NCBI GenBank assembly: GCA_951804945.1
Contig: OX638156.1
Coordinates: forward strand, 49,786,001 to 49,850,000
Origin: Podarcis cretensis
Lineage: Eukaryota
Direction: 5' to 3'
Length of the DNA: 64,000 nt
A model generated the notes under the pieces. That model made no database searches and was not told the DNA's origin. It saw only the letters and a program-made list of their open reading frames with translations. Shown here in pieces: positions 9,308-39,234 of the stretch (within the stretch, counting starts at the first letter, position 1; each line of letters begins with the position of its first letter). A program made the position numbers and the translations under genes.

Positions 9308-9801
9308 TGTAAGGCTTAATTGATGTTAAGCACCAGTGAGTATTTGGGATTGGCAATAAATAAGAACAGCCCTCCTTTGCTCTGCCTCTTTGGGCAGAGA
9401 AGAAACTGGCTCCTGCTGTTTAGGGACTTGACCGGCCTTTGGGCTGGAAGCCAGTAAGATCGGTTTTGCTCTTCAATCTGCAGGGCAGCAGCAGGGGATT
9501 TCTGGGCAGTCAGATTTGTTCTGCCTTGGTTAGTCCCAACAACTCAAAGGCGTGTCAAGGATAAAGGAAGTAGGATGTAGCATGAGGTAATGTTGAGTCA
9601 AGATCACATGGTAAATTAGCTGAAGAGCGGGAGGGGCAGCTTAAAAGTGGGAGAAAAGCTATACAGATTTTCTTGCCAGCCCAGCTGACCTCTGATATTC
9701 TTAAAGATAGCATGTACATTAGTGATACTTGGGAAATGGTGACCCTTCCCATTTTAGAATAGAAAAGAGCTGTCCAAATGGGGAGGTGGGATGATGCCGC
9801 T

Positions 9802-18800: not shown

Positions 18801-21800
18801 AAAGACTGGAGATGGAAAGGTATTCCCTCCCTGATGTATCCTTTATGTTTGGGGGTTCAGACCAAAGGTGGGTCATAATGCATTATTTTACATGACAATG
18901 TGGCCTCTGGAGCCAAAGCTGGCCTTTAACATGGTGAGCATAAACCTTGGGTGGGACAAGACATGCCACAGTTCCATCGTCCCCCTGAAATGTCCAACTG
19001 ACCTGCAGCTAGTTTTGCTACAGTTGGACAGGGATGTTGTGAATTTCTTCAGCATAGGCTTGAAAGAGGTATCTTTGAGGACCTGAGAATTCTGCATGTA
19101 TCCAGGTCCTGGCAGCACAACCCCATGGCATGGGAGGACTAGGTATGCCAGCTGCAGTGTCCCTTCGCCTACTAGCATCTGATAAGGTCTGGTGCTGCCA
19201 ACGGACTCTCCCACACCAGTCATGTGCTTCCAACCTCCTCCTTGCCTGGCATCCAGTTGCAGTCTGGTTCACTCTAACCCCACCCTCTCGGCCCCCACCC
19301 TCAGCCCTCGCTGGGCCATGGACTTACCAGCTGGGGTTAGGCCCAGTGTTGTCGTGCCAGAGGCGGATGGCGTGGAGGTTGCCCAGGGACTTCTGAGTGG
19401 CAAGGAGGAAGGCATCCCGCCCACCTCGCTCAAAGGAGGGCCCCTGGGGGTGCTGTAGCAGGTGTGGCTCACTCCGGCCCTCTGCCCCATAGAGGGTCAG
19501 GATAACCTCAAGCCAAGGAGGAAGAAGGGGTTAATCAAGGAAAGGGAAAAGAGGGTGGGTGCTGGGTGGGGTTCATGGATTCCTTCCTTTCCTCAGTTCC
19601 TTGCCCAAGCAGGGAGCACATGAAGGATGTCATCAAAGACAGGCTTTTGCACCCCACACACCCACTCCCCGATAGGGAGAGATCTGCCAGACTCGGCCCA
19701 GATTCTGTGGGCAGGAGCCTGAGGTCACGGAACTTGATGGGCAGCACTTGTAGCATCAACAGTACAAAGTGGGCCTGCAGGAAAGTGAGACCCTCCCCTA
19801 CCTTAGCAGAGGTCCCAGCCCCTCGGCGGTAGCCTGTGAAGACTTGCACCAGGTAAGGGAAGCAGGCGGTGGCCTCATTATCTGCTAGGATTGTGACCTT
19901 CACCTGGAGGGGGGAGAGACACACATGGGGTGGGTGGCCCTAGAAATGGCCAAGCCCCACTTCAGCAAGTTGGCTTTTCCAGGGTGTCTGGCTCTCAGCT
20001 GTTTGCTGGATAAATATCTCATTGTTCCTCATTTCAGCACATCAGACAAGAATGGCCTGAATGAGGGCAGATGGGGGGAGTGTCTCTGGCCTGCAAATGC
20101 TAATAACCCCAAACAACCATCATAAATCTTTTGCTTGCCCTTTCCCCTCACCTTCTTAACATCCGTTCTCTGTCTCCATCGAGCCCAAACAAGGGCAACT
20201 CCATAGCCCAGCAACAAGCTGCTTAGCAAGGCCAGCCCGGAAGGGTTCTGGCCCACAGTGCTCAGGAGCTTTGCAGTGTTGTGAAGGTCAATCAGGTGTG
20301 GCAGGACCAAGGCGATGCACCCAAAGAAGGTGAGGTGGTTGCACAAGCACTGGGTGCTATGGAGGGTGCTTTGGGAGCCCACCTGGGAGGGAGGGAGGCA
20401 CTGATGCATTAGAAACCAACACAGGAGGATGAGGTCCCAATAGTTCTGCTCCGTTTGGTTCCCCATGACATTCCGCCCTACTTTTTTTTCTCCCAGCATG
20501 GAAGCAAAGGCTTGCTTGCCTGCCCTGCAGCCCTCTGGCCTGGTTGACCCTACTGCATACCCGACATCCATCACTTCTCCAGGCCTGATGCTGGCTGGAC
20601 CAGTAGTAGCATCCGGAGATGATGGTGTGAATGGAGAGGTTCCAGGGGCCCTGAGAGAGGGGAGCCACCTCTGCAGAGATGTAGTAGGTGCCCAGGCCAT
20701 GATGCTGCAGCTCCTCTGGAGGAATCACCCATGTGTAGGTATCCTCTGAAGCAAGAGCATGAGTCAAAGAGAGCAAAGAGGGACCACACCCACTGACCTC
20801 ACCCACACATTCCCCCACTGGGGGAAACAGTCCTGCCTGGCCCCAGCTCTTCAAGCCCCTCCCTCTGTGCCTACTCCCAGGTGCACAGATTTAAATCAAA
20901 GTGGTTTGGTCAATTATGTAAATAAAGAAACGGGCTGATTTAACTAAGCGATTTAAATCAAATTTCCCATTGATGTTTCCCACAGTGCAAATCTGACCAC
21001 TACACCATGTTAATTTGCAATTAAATGAATTTAATGGGCAATTAAATAATTGAAACACAGCTGATTCAATCTGTATACTTTTGCAACTTTCCCTTTTTAT
21101 TTATAGAGGTAAATTGTTCCCGTACAGCAGGCTTCCTCAAACTCAGCCCTCCAGGTGTTTTTTGGCCTACAACTCCCATGATCCCTAGCTAGCAGGACCA
21201 GTGGTCAGGGATGATGGGAATTGTAGTCTCAAAACATCTGGAGGGCCGAGTTTGAGGAAGCCTGCCATACAGGTCATGTCTTATGGTTGAAACCCAGAAC
21301 AGCCGGTGAAGTTAACAGCTCAAAGCTATGCCCATTTACCCGAGAGTTACCTCACTGAACTCCAATGAGACTTACTTTTAAGGGGATACATGCAGCATTG
21401 TGTTGTATGTATGAGCATAAGAAGAACTTGCTGCATCAGGCCAATGGCCATTCTAGTCCAGCACTATTCTCCTAGAGGTCAGTCAGATGCTCCAATAGGA
21501 AGTCCCAAAGCAGCACCTGCCCTCTAGCTTCCTTCTAACAAGTCCTCACCCTCTTGCCATCCGCTGCTGGACAGGGTGGTGTTGAGGAGGCTGCTGTTCT
21601 TGTTGGGCTGAGGTCGGAGGCCCAGGTGCAAGGTGATCTGGACCACTGTGCTGGATTCCACCGATACTAGCAGGGCATCCTCTACTGATGTGATGTTCAC
21701 CACAATGTCAAAGTTCCTGACGTTGCCAGTCAAGTGAGTGTGAGGGGCCTCAGCACTAGCCTCAGCACTGAGCCCAATCTGGAAGCAGACAGAATGCCTA

Positions 21801-24800
21801 TGGTCAGCCCTGCAGTCCGTCCGTCCCCCCACTGGTCCTTGAGCACATACTGTCTCCCATCAGGCCATACAGCACAAAGGGCTTATCTCTGATCCAGAGC
21901 CGGACCTTGGACAGTGCTGCTTCTCCATGCCACTTGGGTGCTGAGAGAAGAGTCCCCCTGATGAGAGAACTTTCCAGTACAGTATCCATTCTCACCTCTA
22001 TTTCCTCTGCAAGATTGTGGACACCGATGGACTCTTCGCTGGCCATGAGAGCGATACTTGCCGTCCTTTTGATTGGCTTCTCATCCAGGTGCCGGAAAGG
22101 GTTGAATGCAAAGGAGGCCACCTAGAGTGAAGATGAGAGCAAGAGCGAGCTGTGGGGGTGCCCTCTGCCCCATCTCCACGCCCTGCCAGCCCTGCACTAT
22201 GTCCCCCTACAAGGACCCAGTGGACAGCAAGCCACTACCACCTTACCTGGACTTGTACATGAGGGTGCTGGCTCAGAACTGGCTCCAGAGCAGAGCTGGA
22301 TGGGAAGGTTACATTCAGGCCCCTTGGCTGAAGCAGGTGGAAGGAGGCATGGGGCAGGGAGGCTTTGTCACACCTGGTAGGGAGTGGGGAGAGGGGTTAC
22401 TGTTGAAAGTTTGAGTGCAACTCCATTTTCAGAAGAGGGGTCTTGCGTAGGTTAGGACAGATAGAACAGAGTTCAAGACCTCCAGATTCCCAGACTACCT
22501 TTGTGTCATTAACCTCTTCAGCTCACCTCTCTATCTCTTTTGATATTCTCAGGCTGCACTCTGTTTCACAACTTCCTGCTCCTCTCACATTTCTCTCTCC
22601 AAGAAGAATTATCCTCTGAGATAAGACAGGAGCCAGCATGGCTACCATGCTCTAGTACAGACTTGTTAGGCTAGAACTTGGAACTTTTCTATCCAACTAT
22701 GTGGTTAGAGTGCGAGACATGGACGTGGGAGACCAGGGTTCAAATCCCCGCTCAGCCATGAAACCCAATGGGTGACTTTGGGCCAGTCACTATCTCTCAG
22801 CCCCAACCTACCTCGCAGGGTTGTTATGAGAATAAGATGGAAAAAAGGAGAAGTCTGTGAGCTATCCTGAGCTATTTGGAAAAAAAGTGGGTTATAAATG
22901 TAGTAATAATTTTAAAGATAATGTAATAGACTCCTTTATTATTTATCTTAACTACAAACATCCCTGTGTGTGAGACTGTAACTCATAAAAGTCTGTCCCC
23001 TAACCAAGATGCATTCTCTGAACAATGTCTTACTCTGCGTACCAAAAGGATTCCAATAGGTAATTGGCAACCAAACAATTCATTCAGTTCCCCAGCTGCC
23101 CTGAGCAAGCCCCCCCCCCTTCTTCAGTGCCTAGGAGAGAGGAGACTGGTACCTGCTGAGGGTGGTGCTGAGCACAGGAGACACCACAGTTACTGTGGAT
23201 TCCTCCATGGTGGAGCTTCCCAACAGGAGCCCCGTCTGGATCAGAGGAAGGGCTTCCAATGCTGTTTCCAGGACCTTTGGTTCCTGCTGCAGAAAAGCCA
23301 GGTGTGGTCAGGAGCTGGGCAGAGCCAGGGTGGGGAGCCGGGAAGCTCAGCTCCCTTCCCATGGGCTCAGAGCAATGGGAAGGCCTGGACAAAAGGGGGT
23401 GCCTTCAGAATGAGACCCAGCCATGCAGCAGGCCTGAGCTGGCAACCCCATCCTTCTGAATAGCCTCCTCCACCCGACCCCTGCAGGTCCTCTTTCTCCC
23501 CCACCTGTTGCGGGCCGAAGCTGGGTGTCTGGCTGCCTGAGGCTTGGAGGAGGTTGCTGAGGGCCTGGAAAAGAGCCTGTGATGCGAGGTCTAGGCAGGA
23601 GGCATTGCTGGCAGGGTGGTCCCTCAGTAGCTGAGAGCTCAGGGAGAGGAGTGCCTGGCTGGCAGAGGCCTGTAGGAACAAGGCAGGGCTGGTCATCTGG
23701 CGGGGCTGATTTGGGGGTGCAAGGGCGAGGCTGGCTGTGCCAAGCGGCAGGCTTGCCTCTGTACATAGCCTGGGTAGAGCCTGGTTCAACCAAGGACTGG
23801 GAGAATAGGCCGCAGTGGACAGACCCTTAGATCAGGGGTGCCAGCCACCCACCCTCCCTCCCTCCCTGCCACATGCCAGTACCTGGGCATCGTCTGAGAG
23901 CAGAGCATGGAAATTTGTCAAATTCTCCAGCATCCGGGCTGCCTGCTCCAGTGCCATAGGGTGGTCTGGAGTCTGCACAGCCTGGCTGAACTGGTGCAGC
24001 ACCTCCTCTAGGGCCTGTGGGAAGACCCTGAGTGAGGGGCTGGGGGAGAAGGGGGCCTGGTTGCCCTATTACGCTGTCAGTGAGCCTGCAAGTAGAACTT
24101 ATCGCTAAATCTCTAATTCTAGGAAGGCTCCTCTACCCTATAGGGGGAAGAACTGAAAAGGCAGCTAGGCGGGAGGGAGCCACACATCCCCCCACACCTC
24201 CCCAGAGCCACTTGCCCCCCTTTCTGCTGTGGGCAAAACCAGTCTGGAAATCACTCACTAAGTGACTTTGGATCCCTGGGAAATCACATACGAGTCACAC
24301 TCATCTTTGATCTGCACCTCAGCGTTGGTTTTTCCAGGTGCAAAGGAAGAATCCTGCAACGCACACAACACCCCCACCTCCTGGCATCTCCGGAGCAGGG
24401 TGTGGGGTATGGGACAGAGAGAGAGAGGAGAGCCTGTCTGGACAATGTGCCACCAGGGTGGGGGCAGGTGCCAGTCCAGATGTCTCCCTACCTTCCCCTG
24501 GTCCTCAGGGGGGAAGTCTCTAGGGCTGAAGGTGAAGGAGTCCAGGCTGGTGTTGGACTGGTGGCTTTTGGTACCCCCCGAGGTGGTTTTGCTGGTGGGC
24601 AGCGGCTGAGTGCTGGGCCCTGGGGCTGAGGTCTGAGAGTTGGGGCGGGTCTGGCTGCTGTTGCTGGCTGGCCAGGTGCTGGATGCCGACTTGGGGCTGC
24701 TCGGCGGATGGCGGGGAGTGCCGAGTTCTGGCCTGGTCCCAAGGAATGACTGGATGTCAGCGGTGGTCGGCTGGCGAACTGTGCTGCTTCCTGGAGGAGC

Positions 24801-26486
24801 ACTGGGCGGCGGAGGAGTCGCGGCGGAGGGCTGGGCGCTCAGAGGAGCAGTCGCCGTCGGCTCTTCGGTGAGGATGGGCGTCGCCTCCGTCGGGCCGCAC
24901 GTCAAATGCTGGCAGGTCGTTCTCTGGGAGACAGGGAGAGAGAGTCACCAGGGCCGGCTGCTCGGTGGTGCGCTGCGGTCAGCCCAGGGGGCGCTGCGCA
25001 GCGACGGCGGCCTAGAGAGCCTTCGCCCGTTCCTGTTCGACGGCTGCGCAGGCACCTGCTTTGGCGGGAACTTACCACCCAGGGCGTGGAAGTCTCTCGG
25101 GGCGTCCTCGGGGGGCCTGTAGCGGACAGAGAGCAGAAGGGGTTGAGCTCGGGAGGATTCATGGAAGCGGCGCTTCCGGGGCGGCAGGGATGGTTCTAGG
25201 ACCTGCGACGGCCCAGCCCAGCCGCCTCGGGAGAGCCTGGCCCTGGCCCGGCCTCCGGGGTTGCAGCCACCTCGAAAGGGCGTGCTTCGTGGGGGTCTTC
25301 CAGAGGCGTGCTTCCAGAGAGTCTCATCCTCAGCTCAGCCACGAGGTCCTTCTCGCTCTTTGAAGCTGGAGGCCCCCTGCCCAAGCCCCTGTGGGTGCGG
25401 AATGAGGGCACGAACTCCCACCCCGGGGGGCGGGCAGACTCACGCACCAGATTGGCAGATGAAAAAGTGCTTCTGGTCACACTCCTCCCTCCGGGTATAG
25501 AATTGGTCCCCATTCCGGACGAGGACTTTGCAGTGGTCTGCGGAGAGTAGGCGCCGCCGTCAGACACGGTTATCCCTCTTCCCCGCCACCCCACACTCAG
25601 CACCAGCCCGCCAGTTGTTTGCCTTTGAGGGATTTTCTTAGGATAAGGCTTTCCGGCTGAGGCTGCCCTGAGCGCCCCCTGTAGGGCTCCGCTCCATCTC
25701 CAGACTAGAGTCTCCCAGTGGTGGCAAGTGGTTTAAGGGGAGCCTTTGCATAGGGTGAGTGCCTGGTAGCAAACCCTCGGACAGCCTTGCATTATTATTA
25801 TTTTTAACCCTCCCCACTCCTTGACTGCCTGTCACAGACTGCAGAGCTGAGCCATCAGCAGCGGGGCTTGGCATGCGAGGATGGTTGCCACCCTGGGTGT
25901 CCTTGAAACGCTGGTGGGCGGGGTCCCTCGACGGAGGGAAGGGTCTGCAGGGCCTGGCTGGGCCCTTGAAGTGAGAAGCTTGGCTGCCCCGCCTCGATCC
26001 CCACGAGGAGACGGTGGTCCCACATTGTGTAGGGAGGGTGGCGGTCTTGCCCTGAGGGGTTTGGCGTCTGGGCGAGTCAGAGATGCTGAGTGGGGAATAA
26101 CACACATCCCGGGAGAGTATCCTGGAATTGGCTGCTGCTGCCCCTCTTCTGCGGTGCTGCTGTTGGGCCTCTGCGCCCCCGCCCGCCCCGCTCTCACCTT
26201 TGCCAGGGTGGCTCACTTCTGGGAGCGCCTTTGCTGCAGCCCCGATCCAGGTTTTGCTCCTGTCGTCCAGGCGGTCGCGCAGGGCGTCCTGGATCTGCTG
26301 GTTCCACGTGTGGAGGAGCCGGCCGTGGGATCGTCCGCACAAAATCACTGCACGCAAGGCGGGTTGTGGCCACCGGAGCAGCCGATAGCAGTCCTCTCCT
26401 GCCACGGGCAGGCAGGCGGGCTCCGATTCCTCCGAAGAGACCTGTGCGGCCCAGAGCCAGAGCCACATCCCTATAGGGAGCCCCAT
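9802..26486 (-). CDS. PKD1L3: Polycystin-1-like 3 (PKD1L3), full length, 31 coding exons, ~1772 aa
   Basis: Exons (- strand, 5'->3'): 26486-26198, 25537-25448, 25116-25076, 24923-24492, 24014-23883, 23669-23505, 23286-23153, 22373-22247, 22121-21996, 21778-21550, 20745-20561, 20382-20152, 19903-19802, 19506-19328, 18527-18381, 17933-17740, 17338-17142, 17044-16876, 16678-16486, 15542-15290, 14951-14849, 14703-14560, 13404-13219, 12782-12491, 12132-11999, 11826-11702, 11149-10989, 10886-10676, 10561-10460, 10207-10076, 9915-9802; phases are consistent (5319 nt). Signal peptide, C-type lectin (CYRLL...[10 protein letters not shown]), GPS ([21 protein letters not shown]), PLAT ([33 protein letters not shown]), [10 protein letters not shown], and polycystin channel domain ([38 protein letters not shown]). 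Tail-to-tail with IST1, as in mammals. Confidence 0.9.
11288..11419. mobile_element. Short palindromic hAT-type MITE
   Basis: cagcctttctcaaccttgggtccccagatg...catctggggacccaaggttgacactg; near-identical 8-bp flanks ctctaaaa/ccctaaaa. Confidence 0.65.
13553..13852. mobile_element. hAT-type non-autonomous DNA transposon
   Basis: Terminal inverted gggcgtag / ctacgccc; exact 8-bp TSD ggtatgat at 13545-13552 and 13853-13860; CpG-rich interior. Confidence 0.7.
13976..14206. mobile_element. Tc1/mariner-pogo (Tigger-like) MITE, copy 1
   Basis: TIR cagtggtacctcgggtta...taacccgaggtaacactg, TA on both sides, internal taacctgaagc repeats; same family as 48105 and 50780. Confidence 0.8.
21128..21264. mobile_element. 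Short palindromic hAT-type MITE
   Basis: caggcttcctcaaactc...gagtttgaggaagcctg long inverted arms; 8-bp flanks ccgtacag/ccatacag. Confidence 0.75.
22700..22905 (+). mobile_element. tRNA-derived squamate SINE (Squam3-like)
   Basis: A-box gtggttagag, B-box gggttcaaatccc, then gggtgactttgggccagtcac...caacctacctcgcagggttgtt and an A/T-rich tail. Confidence 0.65.
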
Positions 26487-26540
26487 GCCGCTCCCTCTTT
26501 GGAGCAAGCTGGGCCTGGGTCACCCTTTAATAGTCTAAAC
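24640..26540 (-). promoter_or_regulatory. CpG-rich 5' region of PKD1L3 with TATA-like TATTAAA (26532-26526) about 40 nt upstream of the ATG
   Basis: High CpG density across exons 1-4; - strand reads ...tttagacTATTAAAgggtgacc...ATG(26486). Confidence 0.45.
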
Positions 26541-27250: not shown

Positions 27251-27413
27251 TTTATTCGGTGTGGGCCATGCCTAGTGTTGAATCACTTTGCAAGATAGCA
27301 CACAGCTTGGAAGCTGACCTCACATAGACTTCTTACTGGGGAGAGGAGGCTTGCCTTCATTGCAATCACACACAGAGTACTTAAAATTGGAATATAATAA
27401 AGCTCCATTTATT
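27251..27413 (-). terminator. Candidate polyadenylation signals (AATAAA on - strand at 27413-27408 and 27256-27251) for the truncated polycystin gene
   Basis: Two tttatt hexamers between the truncated gene's stop and the PKD1L3 start. Confidence 0.45.
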
Positions 27414-28854
27414 ATAAGAAATATATACTTGGATAGAAAAGAGTTACTAGTTTTAGCTAATTAATCTTAAAGCTGCAAGGGAGTCATGCTTGCTCTTTAC
27501 TCTCGGCAGAGATACATCCATAGATGTCCTCTCTCCTTCAGCTTCAGAAGGAAGAGGGGGAAGCAGGAAGTTTGGTCACTGTCAGGAACCCTAAGAAAAT
27601 CAGTCTAATAGTAAAGGAAAGGTCATCACAGAGATCAAAGGGCAGTTAAACAATCTTGGAGGTTCCCTTCTCTATCCACTTTAACCTCATGCAAACCCTC
27701 AGCAAGCTGAGTTGCATCCCAACTCTTTCAACACTCAGTGAGTTCAGGGTTGGCTCCATTGGCAGGTTACAGAATGGGACTTCGCTGTCCCCCTCCCATG
27801 CTGTGCCCTCCCGTTCCTCCAGAGAGATGGTCCTGGCCTTTGTACAGGTGTGGGTGACATCATGTTGGAGAGGCTGATTAGAGGTCTTGGGCACATGGCG
27901 TGGCAAAAGCCAAGGTGGCCTCGCAGAAATTTGTCCTCCCATCACTGGAAAGAGCACAGCCTGCAATCACAGAGGTCGAAGATGTGGGTCAGGATGGGGC
28001 CCTAGGACTGCTTCCCAGCATATTTTCTACTCCCTTGGCCCCAGTCCTGGAGCTGCAGTGTCCCTTAGGATGGTTAAATTACTGGTAACCTAATATGTCT
28101 GCTCTAGTCTGACTGGCAGTGGCGTTTCAAGGCCACGAGCAAAGAGAGACTACTCGAGATCTTTTTAATGGGGAGTGTCAAGAGTTAGGAAGGCAGGGGG
28201 CCTGCAAAGCAGCTGCTCTGCCACTGGGTAGTGACTCCTCTCCACCCCCACTGTGTACATGCCAGTCACTACCTTTTAGTCCTCCCCAATCTTCTCCCCT
28301 TCCACAGGGGACAGTCCCAGTCCTGCCCTTGCAGGGGCTCCAGTTCAATGTGTTTCCTTCCTGTTTAGCAAGCCCAGGAGATGCCTAGTGTAGCCACTCT
28401 GCATCCTCTGCCTCTCCCAGAGCAGGCCCTGGGCTACCTGCTCTTGGCAACCAGAGGTGCCCACACCAGCAACTGGTTTCCTCCACCAAGCCTGCATGCC
28501 TTGCCGGGCCAGCCAAAGCAGCAGAGGAATGGTCCAGGTGGGCTCCTAGTCATGCCGATCCAAAGTGGAGAGGCGTGATTCTTCTCTGTGTGTGCATAAC
28601 CTTCCCTTACGGGAGGTGGAAGAGGGAACAGACGTAGTACTGAAAACCCTTCCTCTTGTCTGGCCCCTGTCTTGAAAGGAATTTTTTGAACTTGAGTTTG
28701 TTTTCTGCAGTTGGTGCGGGACATTCTCAGTGCCACCTTTGCCTTTCTCTACATGGAGGCAGTCCAGGTCCCCACCCTCTCTGGAGAGGCCCCTTTCCCT
28801 TTCCCTCCTTCAATTCATCCTGCCTTTCCACTTCTGCAAGCCTCCTTCCTCCCT

Positions 28855-31800
28855 TTACCGGTCTTCCAGGTCCAGGGCTGCCTCATCTTCATCCTCTGCT
28901 TTCTTCAGTATCAGGGCACAGAAAATGGCAAAGCTTATCACCTGCATTGGGTTTCATGGAAGAAGAGGGATGGGCAGGATCCGCAGCCATTTTGCCTCCC
29001 CCCATCCATAAAACAGAGGGAGCATCTGCAGGCTTCCCTTTCTCCAGATGAGCCAAGCCCCTCACTTTGTGCCAAAACACCACAACAAACTGGTGTATGT
29101 GTGAGGGTGCTTTGGTTAAATTCTCCCCCACCCCCTTGAAATTCATGGGAGGAAGAGAGGAGATGCAGTGGGTGTTTGCAGTGCTCCAATGCCAGACACC
29201 TGTCCCAGCCAGGCAGGTGGCAGACACATACATGAGATGAGGAAGAAGTATGTGCACCATGATTTCTGCTGCTGCTGCTGAGATGTCCCTTCCCCTACGG
29301 GTTGCCAGTTGAGGAGTATCACAGACCCTGAGATTTCAGGGCCCAAAACTGAGACCTAGGGGCTGCCCCTGGTGGTGTCAGGGGCACAGACCCTGGTACG
29401 TATAGTCACAAGGGTCCTAGAGACAGAGGTTAATTAGGAGAAGAGTGGAGGTAGTCCTCCAGAGTGTCTATGCTATAATTTGCATCCAGCTCCTGCTGGT
29501 CCAAAGTGTGCACCCTCTATACACAGTCTTCTGTGTACACACACACACCACTGGAACTCTCACCCATCTAGCGATTCAAGCCCTTCACCTGCCACCTGGA
29601 GGGTACTAGGCAAACCTGAAGACTTCAGATCAGACTTAGAGGTCTGGCAACCCGACCTCTCATGAGAAGGCCCCCCTGGAATGCTGGGTTTGCTCAGCCT
29701 GGCTGGGAAGTACCTTGAGGGGCTGCAGGACGAAGAGGGCCTGGCCCATGGAGATGGCAGTGGAGATGAGCCAGCGTTCGGTGCTCTCCTTGCCATAGTG
29801 GAAGCCATAGAGCAAGGAGAAGAAGGTGGCCACTGCGCTGAGGGAGACCAGCAGGGCCCACCCCACCCAGGCGCCCCACCAGGGCAAGTGCCACCTTAGG
29901 CTGTGGAGGAACAAGAGGAAGGCATGAGGAAGAGGCTCTGCAAGATAGGCTTCCCTGCCTGCTCACAGAGCCTGTCTGAGCTACCTACATGGAGCGAGAC
30001 TGGATGGGGCTTGCTAGCTCGAGACGCCTGGCCATCTCCTCCACGCGCTGCTGCAGAGCCGGAGGGTGCTTGGCTGTCGGGACTCCTGGTTCCAGCTCCC
30101 CCAGGAGACAGGAGATGTGCCGCAGCTTCAGGAGGAGGTAGCGGTTGCAGTAGGTCTGGTGCAGCGCATCAGGGCTGGGCGCCACACTGGAGATCTTGGG
30201 CTCCCTCCCTGCAAGCAGAAGCCGCAGCGTCACCATCCTCTGGGGGTCTAGCAGGGCTGCCCAAGGCAGGCAGGCAGGCATGGCTGGGCTCTCACCTGCT
30301 GCCTCCTCTTCCTCCCCAGGATCAGGGTGGATAAAACGAGCCAGCCACTGCAGAAGCTCCTCAAGGTCCATGTCGGGATGTAGCAGCTGTTGGCTCTGCT
30401 TGCTGGCTTTGCTCAGTGTCTCCACTGCCCCGCGCAGGCTCTAGGGAGGGAAAGACAAGCACAGGTAGACGGGAGAGTGGCAGGCGACTGGGGCACAAAT
30501 GCACCCAACAGGCTGAGGGTAAGGTGGGCAAAGCTGGGCACAAGAAGATGTAGCAGATAGGAGAAGTGCTGTGGGAGATTTGCAGCCAAATCTAACAATG
30601 CATATTTTTGTGAGTTAGCATGTGAAGGGGTTAAGACCATAGGGTCACATTATTGATAGAGAGACTCGGACCATAGAAATGTAATTGGTAGAGATGGTTC
30701 TGTGTGAGGTCATTTTCCCTCCTCTCTTGGAAATGAAGAATCAAAGTATTTCCTGTTCCTTCCCTCTCTCTTTTCTCTTCAGCCAGTGATGGAGCAGACA
30801 TATATCCTATCGCTCCAGCATTGGCCACATGCCTCAAGCTGTTCATACTGTAAATATAAGTATTTTGCCTGCATTTATTTTACTGCTGTTGCTGCTGAGA
30901 ACAATTGCATGACTATGAGTAAGTAAACATATTTTAAACTTACTTCTCAGTCTGTGTCTGGTTCTTTGTTAAGGGGCAACCAGCTTGCTTTGTGGCTGCA
31001 CTGAATTTAATGAATGCTTCACAGCCTTTTCCTATGCTTTCTATTTTTCTGCTGAGGATGAGACTTTGAACTCTGCTCAGCCCTGTGCTTTAAACGAAGC
31101 GATAAGCTGATCTCTTTGTATGTTCAGCCCACAAATGTGGGCACCTGGAGGGATAAATTATCATTAACATATCCTCTCCTACCTATTAAAAGCCATCCCA
31201 TAACTGCCACAGAGAAAAATCTCTGGCAAGCCAGTGCTTGCTGTATCTGCAAATGCAAAAACGTCTCCCTGGGACCAAGTTCACTGGTGCAAGAAGGATC
31301 CTGGGGGACGTGGGGCTTCGGGGATCGGGTGGGGGTTCTTCTCCACTGCCAGCTCAGCCGTGGCCTTATTCCAAGGGGAGGCACAATGGGGAAAATGCCC
31401 TGGGTCCTGGAGAGCTCTTGTCCCTACCTCATGCACAGTGTCCAGGGTTGTTGGGCTGGCAGGGGCACTGGGCACAGCCGTTGCCAGGCCGGGCTTTGCA
31501 TGGCTCTTGCGTGGTTCAGCGTGGCGGAAGATGAATACAAGGAGCAAGTTGACGGGGAAGGTAATCAAGGCACTCTCCACACTGATCATGATGTCCTTCC
31601 AGGAGAGGGAGAAGCAGCTGCCTGTGTATCAACGGGGGTGGGGGGGTGAAAGTGCCTGCAAGTGGACCTACCAGTCACTACTCTTTGTGCCCCAAGGAAG
31701 CTGGAAGGAGGCACCAACTGCTACCTGCACAATCAGAGGCAGGATACCTCTAGATTCAGGGGGTGGGGGATCAAATTTAGGAGAGGAGCCTTGCTTGTGC

Positions 31801-34800
31801 GCTTCCCAGGAGGCATCGGGTAGCCATTGTGTGAGAAGATCCCACCCGCAGTTGGCCTGATCCAGCTGCACCCAGGCTCTTCTGAAGTCCTAATACATGA
31901 ACGTCCCTCCGGCCGGCCCCAAGGGTATGACTGCGTTTGTCTCTCCAGTTGTGGCAGGAGGGACTTTCCTCTACTGGCAGAAGTTGGAGCAGAGGAGTTG
32001 CACAGCCCCCTTTTCCATGCCAGTGGCCCTTGGGAGATATCCCATGTGGCACAACCCTTACCAACACTTAGGAGCTCGGGTGAATCATGGGGCACCTCCC
32101 AGAACATGAGGCTGACAAGGGCAGAGCAGAGGAGGAGGCAGAAGCCGCAGGAGAGGCCCTGGACCCGCGTGACGGGCCGCCCATGGCCTGTTCGGGTCAG
32201 TAGCACTGTCAGCACTGTGTGCTCCTCCCGAAGACCGCTCAGAGTCCTTTGCCGGAAGATGGGCCTGCAGAGAGAGTGGTAGATAGATGGGTGGGAGCAG
32301 GACCCAAGGCCAGGCTATGGGAGAGCCAGAGGAGGAAGACAGATGGAGTCTCCAGCTCTGCCTGGGAGGAGGGGGTTCGGAGATCCCTGCTAAGTTCATG
32401 CACAGTGGGCAGGTGGGGGCTGAGGACACCCAAACAGACTCCCCCGTCTCTTGGTAAGCCTACCAGAATGCTGTTAGCTGGTGCTGTGGAGCTGCTAGGA
32501 AATGCTGGGCGGTGCTGTGTGGGGCGCCTGCTGCTGGGATGTGCCACGGCTGGCAAGAGAAATGGAACCTCCTACTTTGCTGCAGGTCTCGCACTGTGAT
32601 GTGGGCGGTATGCCTGAGGGAAGGGGATGGGTAGTGAGTGCCAGGCAGGAGGCTGGTGCTTCTAGTGCCCCACTTGGAAGAAAGTCCTGCCAGGCAGAGG
32701 CAAGAGGCCTCCCTGCTGGATGAGTGCCAGGTGTGCTGACCCCCCCAGCCCCGCCTCCTCTCGGATGCCTGAGGATGGTCACCCTGACACAATAACCACC
32801 TCTGCCCCATTCAGAGAGAGGGGGAATTGTGGCATGTCCAGCAGAGGCAGGCTGGCACCCCATGGCAGGTGGGCAGTGTCCGAATGCCGGCACAATGTCT
32901 CCAAGTGGTATGTCACCCACCCACCCTACTTCTGGGCAGACTGACCAGGGCAGCTGTGGGGTGGAGTGGGGCTCCTGCCACAACCAAATACTCTGGAGCT
33001 CTCCCAGTGGGTATGGCTCCCGTAGGAGGAAGAGGCTGGCATCCAGGGGCAGGCGCCGAGGCTTGCTGACACCAGACGATCCCTGCAGGCAGATGCAGAC
33101 CTGCTGGAGATGAAGGGGCTGGGTGAGCTCTGGGGCAAAGACCAGGCACCCCACCCCCTCCATCACTCAGGGCAGACCACTCACACAGGGGCTGCCTCCG
33201 GGGGCCTTCTGCTGCCCATGCAGGGAGATCTGGAGAAGGTAGCCATACTGGGCACAGGGATCATCATCGGACAGGAGGACTGGCCCTGCCTGGGAGAGGG
33301 AGAGGGGCGTGAGGGGTGGCGTTTCTAGGGTCATGCTCTGCCATGGAGCAGCACAGGAGAGCAGAGAGCGCTGAGGCCCCATACATACAGTTGTCCTTCC
33401 CACTTGGCCCCAGTGAAGACCAGAATAAGGGGATCTCTTTTGCTGGTGAAGAGATGTGCAAACCTTAAATCCACATGGAATCGTTAGACAGAACAGAGTT
33501 AGCTGCATCTGACTCAGCTGTATGTTTATAGAGAGCAAAATGCAGTCATGACCATTTGTAGAAAATAAGAAGCCTTCCCCGCCCCTAGCCAGCCACACCC
33601 TTTAGGGGTGGAGGGTGAGGAGATCAGAGTCCTTTGTTCTCCACATGGCGTGGGAGAGCCCCTGGAGACCCTCCAAGAGTTCAGTCTCCAAATGGTGGCT
33701 GTTGCTGCATGACCTGCCCTTCTGAGAGCATCACTACCTAAGAGCTGCCAAGGGCATGTGAGTTTGTGCTGCTTGCTGCCAGAACCGGCCCCCCCTTACC
33801 TCCGGCCCTCTCACCCCCAACAACTTACCTGGTGCAGGGGGCGTGTGTCCAACCAGCGGGCCCAGGCCACCCCCACCAAGTAGAGGGCACAGACGACTCC
33901 CAGGACCACGACCAGAACTGGGTTCTTGTTCACCTGGCTAAAGTACTCTGCTGTGCGCACCACATCCAGCTGGACTGGCGCCACCCAGAAGCTGCTGCCA
34001 AAGAAGGAGAGGTGGGTGCAGAGGCAGTGGACTTCCGCCAGGCTGCTGCTCTCTCCTACCTGCAAACAGGGTGGGATTAAGGGTGCTTCTGGGCAGCAGA
34101 TCACCTTGGATATTTCTCACAAAACAGAGATCCAGATGCTTTAAATAAAGAAGCAGGCAGTATGGTCTTGAAATGGGATAGAAGTGTTATTAAGGACCAG
34201 AGGCAGCTATTCTGATTCTTCCCTGCCTCTGGCAGTAGGGGGCGCAAGGTACCCAGATTCCCTTTGTTTCTTGAACGCCAAGACTCACCTTGCAGCCTGC
34301 CTCTCGCCACTGGGCATCAGGCAGGTGCCGGGAGACGCACTGGATCCCATAGGTGCTGACATGTAAGGTGGCAGGACCCTGGCTGGCAGAGAGGTTCAGT
34401 GGCACCACCAGGAACTGAAGGGCTCCTCTCAGGTCACGAAGAACTTCCTCCTTCACTAGCCAAGTGTAGCCATCTGCAGGAGATGGGGGGGGGGCAACAC
34501 AAAAGGGAAACCATTTTAGGAAGAGGTCCTCACACTCCCCAGGCCAAAAGTGGAAGCAGAAGCCAGCTCTTCTGTCCCCCTGCTATACCCAGGCCAACGT
34601 TGGGCTCAATGGGCTCCCGGAGTTGCTCGCTTGGCTGCAGGAAGAGCTCCAGAGGCCCCACAGGGTCCAGGTGAGCGTGGATCATCAGGGATCCCCCTGT
34701 CCATGTCACGTTCGCAGTCAGAAGGAGGGCCTCCCCTGGAGAGAGGAAGGCAGCTGGCTCGGCAGGGGCTGTAGGCCCAACCCGGGGCAGGAAAATCTGG

Positions 34801-37800
34801 GATGGGAAAAGAGAGCAGGATGTCACTGGCTGCTACTGCACCACCACAGTGAGATGAGCAGCTGCCTCAGGCTCTCATCCGGAGCAGAGGCAGCCTCACT
34901 GATGGAGGTGAGCTGCAGCGGGAGAGAGGGAAAGATGATGACAGAGAGACCAGACCCTGTACTGTAGGCTCTCCCAGGCTAAGCGGCTGGCCTACCTGGT
35001 GGCTAATCCAGTTGATCTCCACACTATGAGATCCTGCCATGAGAAATGATCCTGGAGGGCTGTCCTTGCCCTCTGGAGATGCTCAATAGCCCACCCCCTT
35101 ACAGGGAGGAAGGCTCCACTCAGCCCAAAGTCTCTAGGCAGGACATACCTGGACAGGGGTGCTCAGGTTGCTAACGCTGATCTGGCTGCCCTCAGAAAGG
35201 AGGTTCAGTTCAGCTACAGCTCCTGTGGCCCCTTCCCCAGAGCTCGGGGGAAAGGGGCTGCCCAGGAAGCTCACCATCTAAAGAGAGAGGGAGAGAAGAA
35301 GAAAGGGCAGCGCCACTGCTGAGGGGGCCTGACCCACCAGCCATGCCTGCTCGGCCACATGGCCACACTCGGCAGGATGGCTGGGCGCTCCCCCCCCCCT
35401 CACGCTCTGCTCCCCATTTTTGGAAACATGGCTGCTTACTGTTGGAAGCACTGGGTAGGTAGATTGAGTAGGGCCAAGTCAGGGGGCCTTGGTTGCAGGG
35501 GTGTTGGCAAGGGGGTGTCATGAAATGTTTGGAGTCCAACCCAGAAGCATGAGGCTCCAGAAGAGGGAGGGAGGGAAGATGCCTCTGGGTGCATCATCAG
35601 GCTGATCTGAAGGAGCCAAGTCGCTTCTGAGTGCTGGGCCCCAGTGCATTCCACAGCACAGCAAGTGACTCGTTGCCTGGGTGCTCTCTGCCTTCCTTCT
35701 CCTCCTGGGGTAGCAGCAGATGCCAGAGGAGAGTTTGCGTTTCATGGAAAGGGAAGGCCCCTGTGCCCAGTCCAAAGGAGAGGGCCAGCCACACACTCCT
35801 GCTCCGTCTTACCTGCACATCCACTGGGATATTCTGTGGCATGACGGCGCCCAGTGCAGACTGCCCTGGCAAAATGACTCTGGCTGCCCATGGGTTGCCA
35901 GGGAAGGAGAACGCCATATTGCCCAGCCTGGAAGAGTTCACCCTGAGCCAGGGAGACAAAGAGAGTTAGGGTTAGAGCCAGGGCACAGCAGATGGTGCCT
36001 GGGATCAGGGTGCCTTAGGAGAGTTGCCAATCTGCAGGACAGCCAGGCAAATGTGAGCCAGCTGCCATGATGAGGGAAGGGCAGATGGCTACCTCAAGGC
36101 CTTTTCCCTTGGACACTTCCTGCCAAGATCTTTCTCCCTTCCCTTCCCAGACCAGTCAAGCTTCCTACCTTCCCCGTTACCCAGTGGCTGCAAGCCTGGT
36201 AGCTTACCTGTGTGTATAGATGCTGATGAGAGGCGTCTCCATGGTGATGGCATCACTGCTGCCCCCCAGTTCCTGAAGAGCTTGCTCCAGCTTGTGAAGG
36301 ATCTGCATCAGAGTGCCAGTCAGGGCCTCATGCTGCTGGAGGGAGAAGTGGGCAGTTACTGGGCACTCAATCTCCATCCAAGATGGGGCAATATGGGATG
36401 AAGGGACCTGTCCCTCCCCACCAGGGCACCCGGGAGTGTGGCATATCCTCACCTGGATGTTGATGTTGGGTGAGCAGGGGCCCAGAATGACCTGCAGGAG
36501 CCGGCTGGTGCCATGGACTGCCAGGAGGTTGAGGAGGTGCCAGTGTGGGGAGGCTGGAGGCCTCCTTTTCAGCAGGTCCTCACTGACAGCCTGAAGAAAC
36601 CCCACCTCCTCTTCCTGGCACGCAAAGGCACATAATGTTAATGTTCCTCCATGCCCATGCATTGCCCATGACCCTCAGCACTAATGGGGATCCCTCGACT
36701 CCTTCTATGAGATGTTCCCCATTACCTCTCTTGGAGGAAAGAGCTTCTTAGGACTTGGCCTGACTCTTTCTTCAGGTTCCCCATGGGAGCTACACAGCCT
36801 TTGGAGTTGGGGCTCAGTCCCTTCTGGGGCATCCGCCCTCCCCATGGGCCCAATCATACCAGCTCAGAGGCACTCCAGGCACCATTGTTCACCGGCAGTG
36901 TCAGTCGCTGGAGCAGCTCCTGCAGGCAGAATCAGGAGTTTGGGCTCAAATGCTGGCAGGCAAATGCAGATCACTGAATAAGGGATTCCCGGCCTACATA
37001 AGGCCTGTGCTAACCACCAGAAGAGAGGTTGGCTGTCTTGAGCCAGAGGAAGGTTGGTGGCTCTGCTGTGGGCCTCAATGGGGCTGGGCTGAAGGGGGTC
37101 CCCTCCCCAGATACTCCCTCCCAGTGGGGCTCTTTTACCTGCTGCCAGGTCCTGGGAACAACATCCTGCAATGCCTCCCTGATTGCTGATGTCTCTGGAG
37201 GCAAGAGGAGAAGTATGAGCAAGAGTATTTTCTCCCCTCAGGGTCTGCCTACACAGAAACAGGCTTTTTGGCCTCCATAAACACAAACTCCTTGCGGTGA
37301 GCCTGTCTCAACAAGCTGCTTCCTTTCAGGGGAAAACCACTGCCCTGACCGGCAAAAGGATCAGCCTCATGATAAGGGAACCACTGGCTACTAGTTATAT
37401 TCCTGCTTTTACATTATTACAGTTGCTTATTTTCATCCTGAGCATTGCTTCAGGCTCTTTCCATGGAAGAGGTAGAACATGGCAATAAAAGTTTATCTGA
37501 AATAAAACTTGTTAAAAACAGTTAATCACGGGTGCCTTGCCCCTTGGGCACAGCTTAAACAAATACCATTTGTAAATGTTGGAGTTGTAATTCTGTACAG
37601 GCAGACTGAAAACATATATTTTGGTTTTGCTGACATCTACAATCTTTTGGAAAAGATGGTCTATGAGAAATAAGATAAAATACCCCTTTCAGCCCCACAA
37701 ATATTATTTTAGGGCATTTAAAGGGTTTGTTAAAATAAGCAGAATGACCCAAGATGATCAGCCTCTCACAATTGCTTATAATTGCAGATGACCTACTCTT

Positions 37801-39234
37801 CAATGCATTATTTCAGAAATCAATAAATCCCCACATCACCTGGGTACTTCTGCTTATCACCCAGATGCCGCCGCATGAGCCTTTGTGGCCTCTGCCCCAT
37901 GGAGGTCAGATCCTGGAGGCAGACAGAGAAAAAAGAGTGGGACAGAGCAGTGCCACTGTGCCAGGTAGGATATGTCACCCAAATAGCTTTCTTGGAAGGG
38001 GCAGGGCAAAGAGTTCCCTGTTAGGAGCTTGCCCAGGAATCATGCCCAAAGGAATTGTCTGGAGGGTGGCTAAGAGGTGGCAGACAGGCTGTTTTTATTG
38101 CCCCCCCCCCCCTGCCTTGGTGCATCTGCTGGAGTTTGGTTTCAGGCAGCAGGAGGGAAAGCCTATTTGCTTTGGACTTGGAGGGAAGAGAACTGGCCAC
38201 CATCACCTACCAGCTGAGCCTTCTGTTTTTGCCAAGGCCTGGAGCTGTTGGCACTCCTGGCCACTTTGACTGGGCATTCACCTCCCTCCACAGGACCTGC
38301 AAAAAAGACCATCCTGAAAGGGAGCCCCTCCTGGGTCAGGAGGAGCAATCTCTGTCCTCAGAGGTGGGGTGGAGTGGGGGTGTCACAATCCCACCCTGGC
38401 AGCCCAGCTGGCCTCTCACCAAATTCGCAGATGAAAGGATGCCTCTGGCGGCACGTGGGCCCGGTAGCCTCCTGCAGCAGGCCCAGGCTGGAGAGGAAGG
38501 TGCAGGTGGGGGGCTGATGGTGAGCCCCATGCAGATGAGGCTGGGCTCCTGGGCAAAGACACAAGAGGCTGCCATGGGCATGGTGGCAAGCTGGGCAGGG
38601 CAAGGTGAGGGCCTTGCCCTCTTGTAAGATCTGACCACAGTAGGCAGAGCGGGGTGGTATGCCCTTGACAGAGCAGATGAAAATAAGCAGAATTCTACAC
38701 TACAAGCAAAAGAGCCAGCTCTCTGCAGCACAGTGCCCCCCACCTCCACACCCTGCCCCTCAATGTGGCTCCCCAAATCCCAGCCTTTAACCACAGCCAA
38801 GTCAGCTGTGTAAAGGGACCTGGCCTTTGTGATAGAAACCAGGACGCACCCTCCACCCTCTGGAGTAGAAACAACTTCCCACCTCTGCCCAGCCCTCTCT
38901 GGTGCCCCCACAGGACTGACTTACCTGCCACCGCAGGCTTGGTTGGGCCCTTGGAGACCCACCAGCCTCCAGAGGGCCCTCTCAGCTGCCCCCTCCTCCT
39001 TCTCAGAACACCCCATGTCCCTGTCACCTCCCAAGGGACCTGTGCCAAGTGCCCTCCCCATCGGCCACAGGCAGCCTGGGCATCCTCAAAAGCCAGTCTT
39101 TCCTGAGCAAGCTGGTAGCAATATCCTTGGTGCTCCCTTAGCACAGCCTCAGGCGTGGTGACAGGCACAGCAGTCCTGCACAGGGCCCAGAGCAGCAGGG
39201 CTAAGCCGGGAGCTGTCTGTCGCCTCAGTGCCAT
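28855..39234 (-). CDS. Second polycystin-1-family gene (PKD1L2/PKD1L3-like), C-terminally truncated after TM5; 22 coding exons, ~1123 aa
   Basis: Exons (- strand): 39234-38925, 38548-38420, 38296-38211, 37912-37840, 37194-37139, 36919-36860, 36614-36453, 36335-36208, 35942-35813, 35277-35149, 34796-34589, 34473-34289, 34059-33829, 33289-33185, 33100-32946, 32613-32464, 32264-32062, 31621-31428, 30440-30296, 30247-29989, 29900-29714, 28941-28855; all GT-AG, phase-consistent, no internal stop found (3372 nt). Signal peptide MALRRQTAPGLALLLWALC, C-type lectin (CYQLAQERLAFEDAQAACGRWGGHLA...CRQRHPFICEF), GPS (WREAGCK..HCLCTHLSFFGSSF), VTRVQGLSC, LPWWGAWVGW, QPLKVISFAIFCALILKKAEDEDE..DR*. The two GPS exons are the same size (185, 231 nt) as in the adjacent PKD1L3. 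Confidence 0.8.
30621..31115 (+). mobile_element. Putative solo-LTR-like repeat (related copy at ~47115-47540)
   Basis: Both copies start tgaaggggttaa(a)gacca(t/c)ag and carry an aagtaaa...tttaaacttact polyA-like block; AT-rich compared with the flanking gene. Ends and TSD not resolved. Confidence 0.35.

What the first reader, a model, noticed from the sequence alone, without database searches (positions are those of the whole stretch)
28855..39234. Channel-less polycystin-1-family receptor in tandem with PKD1L3
Seen: an intact 22-exon reading frame (~1123 aa) with signal peptide, C-type lectin, GAIN/GPS with an intact HL|S cleavage motif, TM1, PLAT and TM2-TM5, ending ...ILKKAEDEDEAALDLEDR* at 28855. 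If the CG|gtaaag donor is used instead, the best acceptor I could find (28585) also stops after 13 codons. Only ~2.3 kb remain before the PKD1L3 ATG. That gap holds two AATAAA signals and none of the TOP or channel motifs (RLRQ.R, Y.G.GY, W.D..TR....EF..YN.N.NLF) that occupy ~5 kb and 10 exons in the neighbour. Known: polycystin-1-family proteins have 11 TM, made of an N-terminal TM1-5+PLAT module and a C-terminal TOP+6-TM module that assembles with PKD2-family subunits; GAIN/GPS autoproteolysis is shared with adhesion GPCRs. Inference: truncation exactly at the module boundary, with all upstream exons kept in frame despite strong divergence, suggests a selected 5-TM lectin/GAIN receptor. It could not form a channel and might signal through its tethered stalk or modulate PKD1L3/PKD2L1 sensory complexes. 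I do not know of this architecture in mammals.
Basis: partly seen in the sequence, partly recalled or inferred. Interest (0 to 1): 0.85.

Follow-up and report, generated by a model that had tools for sequence, protein, structure and literature searches.

The report
Channel-less polycystin-1-like gene beside PKD1L3
This lizard window holds an intact gene for a polycystin-1-like membrane protein that lacks the whole ion-channel half; the same short gene occurs in frogs, bichirs and teleosts, where it had been dismissed as a decaying PKD1L3 remnant.

Summary
On the minus strand, 39234 to 27942, there is a 23-exon gene. All introns are GT-AG, and the reading frame of 1116 aa has no internal stop. 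It encodes a signal peptide, a C-type-lectin-like domain, GAIN/GPS (CLCTHL|S), TM1, PLAT, TM2-5 and a short acidic tail.

One correction. Annotated lacertid orthologues use the CG|gtaaag donor and add a 19-nt last exon (27960-27942, ...EDRLCSFQ*). They do not use the read-through stop at 28855. Either way the protein ends about 20-25 residues after TM5.

No TOP or channel exon lies between this gene and the PKD1L3 start (26486).

The gene is not special to this lizard. NCBI labels the orthologues 'polycystin-1-like protein 2' in lacertids, agamids, Sceloporus, at least 10 frogs, bichirs and teleosts. All are about 950-1200 aa and lack the channel. They form one clade (100/100) that mirrors the species tree and is separate from both PKD1L2 and tetrapod PKD1L3.

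England et al. 2017 saw the fish version and called it a 'partial pkd1l3' that was being lost. Its coexistence with full-length PKD1L3 in tetrapods, together with site-specific constraint within lacertids, points instead to an old, maintained gene.

Function is inferred only. No RNA reads or orthologous DNA could be obtained.

The parts
38925..39234 (-). Exon 1: ATG at 39234, signal peptide, first part of the C-type-lectin-like domain
   Evidence: 88% identical over 104 aa to the Zootoca vivipara model P0185, and the same start as the agamid models. Donor GTAAGT.
38420..38548 (-). Exon 2: second part of the lectin-like domain (ends ...HPFICEF)
   Evidence: Lectin-domain HMM built from relatives scores 45 bits on exons 1+2, versus at most 1.4 bits for shuffles.
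36208..38296 (-). Exons 3-8 (38296-38211, 37912-37840, 37194-37139, 36919-36860, 36614-36453, 36335-36208): linker and helical GAIN subdomain A
   Evidence: Junctions refined against lacertid orthologues, all GT-AG. Helices 58-138 in the AlphaFold model of the orthologue.
34289..35942 (-). Exons 9-12 (35942-35813, 35277-35149, 34796-34589, 34473-34289): GAIN subdomain B
   Evidence: Beta-sandwich in the model matches latrophilin and BAI GAIN crystal structures. Paralogous to the neighbour at 20890-20360.
33829..34059 (-). Exon 13: GPS motif CLCTHL|S (cleavage between 34009 and 34008), stalk FFGSSF, TM1 (33918-33862)
   Evidence: Motif conserved in all short-clade members. phmmer of this exon found the family. 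Hydropathy peak 2.73.
32464..33289 (-). Exons 14-16 (33289-33185, 33103-32946, 32613-32464): PLAT domain
   Evidence: Clade profile hits lipoxygenase PLAT domains and polycystin-1 in the PDB. PLAT sandwich in the model. The Pfam PLAT model itself does not reach E 0.01 on the two squamate proteins scanned here.
31428..32264 (-). Exons 17-18 (32264-32062, 31621-31428): TM2 and TM3
29989..30440 (-). Exons 19-20 (30440-30296, 30208-29989): cytoplasmic loop; the 87-nt intron between them is in frame and open
   Evidence: Orthologue lengths fit the spliced form.
29714..29900 (-). Exon 21: TM4 and the conserved ...QPLK motif at the start of TM5
28859..28941 (-). Exon 22: rest of TM5 and acidic tail ...KKAEDEDEAALDLED, ending in donor CG|gtaaag. 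Read-through gives the stop at 28857-28855.
27942..27960 (-). Exon 23 (coding part): ttgcag|G CTG TGC TCT TTC CAG TGA, giving ...R-LCSFQ*
   Evidence: Matches the C-termini of the Podarcis, Lacerta and Zootoca models. Pogona and Sceloporus end in a similar ..S.Q*.
27251..27413 (-). Two AATAAA signals (27413-27408, 27256-27251): likely polyadenylation sites, 3' UTR about 0.5-0.7 kb
   Evidence: Sequence only; no reads.
9800..26486 (-). Tandem neighbour: full-length PKD1L3 (ATG 26486; TOP and channel exons at about 15-9.8 kb)
   Evidence: Collinear with residues 1052-2754 of the Phrynocephalus model. Channel tails hit only here. Collinear paralogy with the short gene at 28-37% identity.

Best explanation
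The stretch is an intact protein-coding gene for a channel-less member of the polycystin-1 family. Its layout is: signal peptide, C-type-lectin-like domain, GAIN domain with a conserved GPS autoproteolysis motif, TM1, cytoplasmic PLAT domain, TM2-5, and an acidic tail about 20-25 residues long. It has none of the TOP domain or the six channel-like helices.

It is the lacertid orthologue of an old bony-vertebrate gene. That gene sits in tandem with PKD1L3 in the lizard and frog loci that could be inspected here. It is distinct from both PKD1L2 (its automatic name) and PKD1L3 (its name in the fish literature).

Shown here: the architecture, the orthology, the absence of channel exons, and signs of continuing purifying selection.

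Inferred: the protein is cleaved at HL|S and sits in the membrane as an adhesion-receptor-like two-fragment molecule. Its 5-TM and PLAT module works on its own, in ligand binding, trafficking or signalling, or in association with other polycystins. It cannot be the pore-lining fourth subunit of a PKD2-family channel.
For: Gene structure:
- 23 exons, all GT-AG, 1116 aa, no internal stop.
- 92-96% identical to the NCBI and Ensembl-type models of Podarcis, Lacerta and Zootoca, which have the same end.

Channel-less relatives, all ending 30-45 aa after the start of TM5:
- agamids and Sceloporus
- 10 frogs
- bichirs, plaice and Albula
- One frog-like 1060-aa product sits on a 5.3-kb Logan contig, too short to hold an intron-containing gene, so it is probably a spliced mRNA.

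Phylogeny:
- The careful ML tree gives a short clade at 100/100 with species-tree topology. It is separate from tetrapod PKD1L3 (100/100) and from PKD1L2.
- The AU test rejects fish-short plus tetrapod PKD1L3 as one clade (p = 0.029).

Domains:
- Pfam finds GPS and PLAT but no Polycystin_dom or PKD_channel in frog and fish members.
- The clade profile hits polycystin-1 6a70_B at E = 2.5e-56 over TM1-PLAT-TM.
- The AlphaFold model has GAIN, TM1, PLAT and TM2-5, mean pLDDT 70.5.

Absence of the channel: no channel homology in 26500-28900.

Constraint: within lacertids, 4.0% of deeply conserved columns vary, versus 14.9% of the others (p = 4.8e-6).
Against:
- Squamate copies are very divergent. 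Pfam PLAT and Lectin_C fall below threshold in Zootoca and Pogona. Only 64% of the columns that are at least 90% conserved in frogs and fish keep that residue in lacertids.
- Annotated lacertid models disagree at the 5' end. Only the Zootoca model includes the signal peptide and the lectin-like domain.
- The Amia calva model in the same clade carries a TOP and channel tail. A single ancient truncation is therefore not proven.
- The AU p-value is modest, and the test group was named after the tree had been seen.
Confidence: 0.78

Rival explanations
1. It is a decaying remnant: a partial duplicate or truncated PKD1L3-type gene drifting towards loss. This is how England et al. 2017 read the fish 'partial pkd1l3'.
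For: Published view for teleosts and gar (PMC5318412). Long squamate stem branch (0.89) and domains below Pfam threshold in Zootoca and Pogona. Inconsistent 5' ends among lacertid gene models.
Against: The 23-exon frame and every splice site are intact. The same architecture is kept in lineages that separated more than 400 million years ago (divergence time from general knowledge). GPS, stalk and the TM4-5 motifs are invariant. Within-lacertid changes avoid deeply conserved sites (p = 4.8e-6). The neighbouring PKD1L3 shows a similar squamate acceleration, so speed alone does not mark decay.
Confidence: 0.07
2. The exons are not a gene of their own. They are the 5' part of a long read-through or fusion transcript with PKD1L3: either a 16-TM protein or an alternative N-terminal module.
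For: Fused gene models exist for Phrynocephalus forsythii (2765 aa) and Pelobates cultripes (2401 aa). These cover both tandem genes. Only about 1.4 kb separates the stop from the PKD1L3 ATG.
Against: NCBI models in Podarcis, Lacerta, Zootoca, Pogona, Sceloporus and Pelobates fuscus keep the genes apart. A conserved terminal exon carries the stop, followed by AATAAA signals. Splicing the exon-22 donor (phase 2) to the exon that follows the equivalent PKD1L3 exon (phase 1) would be out of frame. According to England et al. 2017, ray-finned fishes have the short gene but no full PKD1L3.
Confidence: 0.06
3. The channel half exists but is missing here because of an assembly collapse or a rearrangement.
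For: The Amia calva model of the same clade has Polycystin_dom and PKD_channel.
Against: The window has no N runs and nothing channel-like in the gap. The same end appears in many independent assemblies and species. The Amia tail has a branch of 1.17, against 0.21 for its N-terminal module. That suggests relic exons or a stitched model.
Confidence: 0.02

Closest known systems
'Partial pkd1l3' of zebrafish, other teleosts and spotted gar (England et al. 2017, PMC5318412)
   Same: Same architecture and size: zebrafish 1083 aa with Lectin_C, GPS and PLAT but no polycystin cation channel domain. In the paper's Figure 4E it lies in the PKD1L3/dhodh neighbourhood. Plaice (1084 aa), Albula and bichir proteins of this type fall in one 100/100 clade with the lizard and frog genes.
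   Different: [quoted passage not shown] Here it coexists with a full-length PKD1L3 in the same locus, so it is a separate paralogue. The zebrafish sequence itself was not in my tree, so the link runs through other fish.
PKD1L3 (the tandem neighbour; partner of PKD2L1)
   Same: Same N-terminal layout (lectin-like, GAIN/GPS, TM1, PLAT, TM2-5). Collinear exons at 28-37% identity. The two clades, together with a chondrichthyan clade, form a 98/96 group.
   Different: PKD1L3 continues into the TOP domain and six channel-like helices (window 15-9.8 kb). The short gene stops after TM5.
PKD1L2 (the name NCBI gives these proteins)
   Same: Family membership and an acidic stretch after TM5.
   Different: True PKD1L2 of mammals and teleosts forms its own clade (95/94) outside the group that holds the short clade. 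It is 2300-2460 aa long and has the channel.
Polycystin-1 N-terminal TM module in the PKD1-PKD2 cryo-EM structures (6a70, 9l0w)
   Same: The clade profile matches TM1-PLAT-TM of 6a70_B at E = 2.5e-56. Foldseek aligns 539 columns to 9l0w_A.
   Different: In polycystin-1 this module is covalently followed by the channel-like domain that joins three PKD2 subunits. Here it stands alone.
Adhesion GPCRs (latrophilin, BAI) and sea-urchin REJ proteins with few TM helices
   Same: GAIN fold and HL|S/T GPS motif. From my own knowledge, some sea-urchin REJ proteins also lack the 11-TM layout; I did not check this in the paper (PMC1934368 appeared in the list).
   Different: No 7-TM class B2 domain. Five TM helices with a PLAT loop instead.

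Membership tests
Polycystin-1 (PKD1-like) family | GAIN domain with GPS motif directly before TM1 | tested here: met
   CLCTHL|S is conserved. Pfam GPS scores 17-20 bits in squamates (below the cut-off) and 36-42 bits in frogs and fish. The GAIN fold is matched by Foldseek.
Polycystin-1 (PKD1-like) family | PLAT domain in the loop between TM1 and TM2 | tested here: met
   The clade profile hits PLAT domains and polycystin-1 in the PDB. The AlphaFold model has a PLAT sandwich. Pfam PLAT is significant in frogs, bichir and plaice and precomputed for Sceloporus, but not in Zootoca or Pogona.
Polycystin-1 (PKD1-like) family | Eleven TM helices, with a C-terminal TOP (Polycystin_dom) and six-helix PKD_channel module | tested here: not met
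   Five TM peaks only. No Polycystin_dom or PKD_channel in the orthologues. No homologous exons in 26500-28900.
PKD1L2 orthologues | Falls inside the clade that holds mammalian and teleost PKD1L2 | tested here: not met
   It lies outside the PKD1L2 clade (95/94). It groups with PKD1L3 and the chondrichthyan genes at 98/96.
PKD1L3 orthologues | Falls inside the clade of tetrapod PKD1L3 | tested here: not met
   The two 100/100 clades are separate. Both genes are present side by side in this window. The AU test rejects joining fish-short with PKD1L3 (p = 0.029).
Channel-less 'partial pkd1l3' of ray-finned fishes | Orthology with the fish gene of Lectin_C-GPS-PLAT architecture that lacks the channel | tested here: met
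   One clade with plaice, Albula and bichir proteins of that architecture. The zebrafish protein itself was not available, so identity with the published gene rests on matching length and domains.
Adhesion GPCRs | 7-TM class B2 domain after the GAIN domain | tested here: not met
   Five TM helices with a PLAT loop. PDB hits to adhesion GPCRs cover only the GPS/GAIN part.

The most novel reading that the evidence does not exclude
The polycystin-1 N-terminal unit (GAIN/GPS, TM1, PLAT, TM2-5) is an autonomous receptor. Bony vertebrates have kept it as a stand-alone gene for more than 400 million years, next to PKD1L3. It has been hidden under the labels 'PKD1L2' and 'partial pkd1l3', and no mammalian or avian copy turned up here (their genomes could not be searched). 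It would then be a natural experiment on the channel-independent function of polycystin-1-type proteins.
Probability: 0.5. Interest if true: 0.7.

Novelty: new variant of a known kind. Interest (0 to 1): 0.55.

Why it matters
Polycystin-1 is the main gene of dominant polycystic kidney disease. What its GAIN, five-helix and PLAT half does apart from the channel half is still debated.

A gene that encodes only that half exists here. It is conserved from bichirs to lizards and sits beside a complete PKD1L3. This suggests the half can work alone, and it offers tractable models for testing that, since Xenopus and zebrafish carry it.

The result also corrects two labels. The gene is neither PKD1L2 nor a dying PKD1L3. 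It also changes the picture of PKD1L3 history in ray-finned fishes: on this reading they lost PKD1L3 and kept its short tandem paralogue.

Tried and rejected
- Pfam and PDB phmmer on single exon frames gave nothing. The exons are too short and too divergent. The whole-library phmmer of the GPS-TM1 exon opened the case.
I therefore had no orthologous DNA, no dN/dS, and no direct synteny check in other species, including Amia.
- A splice from the exon-22 donor into the PKD1L3 exon that follows the equivalent exon is out of frame.
- My first junction search chose a GC donor for exons 19/20. I replaced it with the canonical 30296|30208 junction, which fits the orthologue lengths.
- The search for homologous proteins returned few hits because of its word and length limits. 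The lack of turtle, bird, crocodile or mammal hits says nothing about their absence.
- The joined spliced protein of the window was built only inside local scripts, for frame, hydropathy, lectin-HMM and conservation checks. Searches used single exons by reference or public orthologues.
Full report
**What is there**

The window has no assembly gaps. On the minus strand, between 39234 and 27942, I reconstructed a gene by matching the window to annotated lacertid proteins (ungapped tblastn) and refining each junction.
- It has 23 exons, every intron is GT-AG, and the CDS is 3351 nt (1116 aa) with no internal stop.
- Exon 22 (28941-28859) ends ...LDLED + CG at a good donor, CG|gtaaag.

**Correction of the 3' end**

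The closest database proteins are gene models from lacertid lizards:
- Podarcis muralis, isoforms X1-X4, 936-938 aa
- P. lilfordi
- P. raffonei, 1107 aa
- Lacerta agilis, 975 aa
- Zootoca vivipara, 1209 aa

NCBI names its models 'polycystin-1-like protein 2'. They are 92-96% identical to the window's product, so the window comes from a Podarcis-like lacertid. All of them end ...LEDRLCS[FL]Q*.

The window carries the matching acceptor and a 19-nt coding mini-exon, ttgcag|G CTG TGC TCT TTC CAG TGA, at 27960-27942. AATAAA signals follow at 27413 and 27256. Pogona and Sceloporus end in a similar ..S.Q*. So the donor is used in the annotated orthologues.

**Domains**
- Single exon frames were too short and divergent for Pfam or PDB searches.
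- An HMM built from the lectin-like domains of relatives scores the window's N-terminus at 45 bits, against at most 1.4 bits for 200 shuffles.
- The domain is compact. It keeps the cysteines and the WWV and FICE motifs. By eye it has no EPN/WND-type sugar-binding motif, so 'lectin-like' is the safer term.
- The GPS motif CLCTHL|S and the following FFGSSF stalk are conserved in every clade member examined.
- Hydropathy gives five TM peaks.
- A profile of 18 clade members hits polycystin-1 (6a70_B, E = 2.5e-56) over TM1-PLAT-TM. It also hits lipoxygenase PLAT domains and adhesion-GPCR GPS regions.
- An AlphaFold model of the P. muralis orthologue has mean pLDDT 70.5. It shows GAIN-A helices, the GAIN-B sheet, TM1, a PLAT sandwich and four further long helices.
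- Foldseek matches latrophilin and BAI GAIN domains, PLAT domains and polycystin-1.

**No channel half**

I used seventeen TOP and channel tails from across the family as tblastn queries with relaxed settings. Significant hits fell only at 9-15 kb, inside the neighbouring gene. Nothing better than E = 0.44 was found in 26500-28900.

The neighbour is a complete PKD1L3 (ATG at 26486, last coding exons near 9.8 kb). It is collinear with the short gene at 28-37% identity over the shared half.

**It is an old gene, not a local accident**

Proteins of the same clade that end 30-45 residues after the start of TM5 occur in:
- agamids and Sceloporus
- ten frogs, including Xenopus laevis and Ascaphus
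- bichirs, plaice and Albula

Pfam finds GPS and PLAT, but no Polycystin_dom or PKD_channel, in the frog and fish members.

One frog-like 1060-aa product lies on a 5.3-kb Logan contig. That is too short for an intron-containing gene, so it is probably a spliced mRNA.

A careful ML tree of the GPS-to-TM5 module (36 rows, 616 columns) gives these results:
- The short proteins form a clade with 100/100 support. Its internal order follows the species tree: bichirs, then Amia, then teleosts on one side; frogs and squamates on the other.
- Tetrapod PKD1L3 forms its own 100/100 clade.
- These two clades plus a chondrichthyan clade form a 98/96 group.
- PKD1L2 lies outside that group.

An AU test rejects placing the fish short genes with tetrapod PKD1L3 (delta lnL 26.4, p = 0.029). 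The test group was chosen after seeing the tree.

So the earlier scan note calling the gene 'PKD1L2-like' is right that it is not a recent copy of its neighbour, but wrong about PKD1L2.

**What was already known**

England et al. 2017 (PMC5318412) reported a 'partial pkd1l3' in zebrafish (1083 aa; Lectin_C, GPS, PLAT), other teleosts and gar.
- The gene lacks the channel domain and lies near dhodh.
- Their tree used the channel domain, so this gene could not be placed.

I found no paper on the tetrapod gene. The catshark genome paper names chondrichthyan pkd1L4.1 and pkd1L4.2 outside the L2 and L3 clades. These may be the chondrichthyan clade in my tree.

The new points are these:
- The short gene coexists with full-length PKD1L3 in lizards and frogs.
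- It is orthologous to the fish gene, not to PKD1L3.
- It is therefore a separate, long-lived paralogue.

**Is the lizard copy alive?**

Squamate copies are very divergent:
- The stem branch is 0.89.
- Pfam PLAT and Lectin_C fall below threshold in Zootoca and Pogona.
- Only 64% of the columns that are at least 90% conserved in frogs and fish keep that residue in lacertids.

The squamate PKD1L3 sequences show a comparable acceleration and the same odd amino-acid make-up. That fits the GC-rich setting of both genes.

Within lacertids, columns that are deeply conserved vary in 4.0% of cases, against 14.9% for the rest (Fisher p = 4.8e-6). Neutral drift would not produce that difference. The frame and all 44 splice-site dinucleotides are intact.

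**Unresolved**
- The Amia calva model in the short clade carries a real TOP and channel tail.
- In a channel tree the tail sits as sister to tetrapod PKD1L3 (support 90). Its branch is 1.17, against 0.21 for its N-terminal module.
- It may be a set of relic exons stitched in by homology-based annotation, a fusion with a neighbouring gene, or a true full-length copy. In the last case the truncation happened more than once.
- The lineage-specific peptides after the acidic cluster (squamate ..S.Q*, frog ..DETAL*, different teleost and bichir ends) fit either history.
- Fused models in Phrynocephalus and Pelobates cultripes are most simply annotation mergers. NCBI splits the two genes in Pelobates fuscus, and the paralogous splice would be out of frame.

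**How it probably works (inference)**
- The conserved GPS and stalk suggest autoproteolysis into a lectin-like/GAIN ectodomain held on a 5-TM stub.
- The PLAT loop would face the cytoplasm.
- Without the S1-S6-like helices the protein cannot take the polycystin-1 position in a 1:3 complex with PKD2-type subunits.
- Whether it signals by itself, traffics cargo, or attaches to PKD1L3/PKD2L1 or other polycystins is open.

**Surroundings**
- IST1: plus strand, about 3.2-7.5 kb, convergent with PKD1L3 as I recall it is in human.
- A cytochrome-b5 gene (CYB5B-like by eye): plus strand, 52.1-58.2 kb.

Noticed in passing
window 3202-7458 (+): IST1 exons (Pfam Ist1, E = 1.7e-22; C-terminal ...DIDFDDLSRRFEELKKKT at 7198-7458), convergent with the 3' end of PKD1L3. 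From memory this is the human IST1-PKD1L3 arrangement.
   Followed up: partly
window 52104-58217 (+): Cytochrome-b5 gene (CYB5B-like by eye): first coding exon at about 52104 in a GC-rich island and a heme-binding exon at about 57900 (Pfam Cyt-b5, E = 6.8e-14). It lies upstream of, and divergent from, the short polycystin gene.
   Followed up: partly
window 30209-30295 (-): The 87-nt intron between exons 19 and 20 is in frame and has no stop. Retaining it would insert 29 residues into the cytoplasmic loop without breaking the protein. This may explain the length differences among models.
   Followed up: partly
protein P0019 (Amia calva, 1158 aa): This is the only member of the short clade whose model carries Polycystin_dom and PKD_channel. 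The tail has a very long branch (1.17), while its N-terminal module has a short one (0.21). It may be relic exons, a stitched model or a true full-length copy.
   Followed up: partly
proteins P0002 (Phrynocephalus forsythii, 2765 aa) and P0003 (Pelobates cultripes, 2401 aa): These gene models fuse the short gene with the downstream PKD1L3 into one protein with two GPS-TM1-PLAT modules. They are most likely annotation mergers of the tandem pair.
   Followed up: partly
frog orthologues P0162, P0008, P0204, P0203, P0208: Several frog proteins end in ...DETAL, ...ETMF or ...ETIL, which resembles a class I PDZ-binding tail. Squamates, bichirs and teleosts have different ends.
   Followed up: no
window 24000-40000 versus 40000-64000: GC content is 0.51-0.63 across the two polycystin genes and falls to about 0.40-0.47 upstream. 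The squamate proteins of both genes have an unusual amino-acid make-up in the trees.
   Followed up: no
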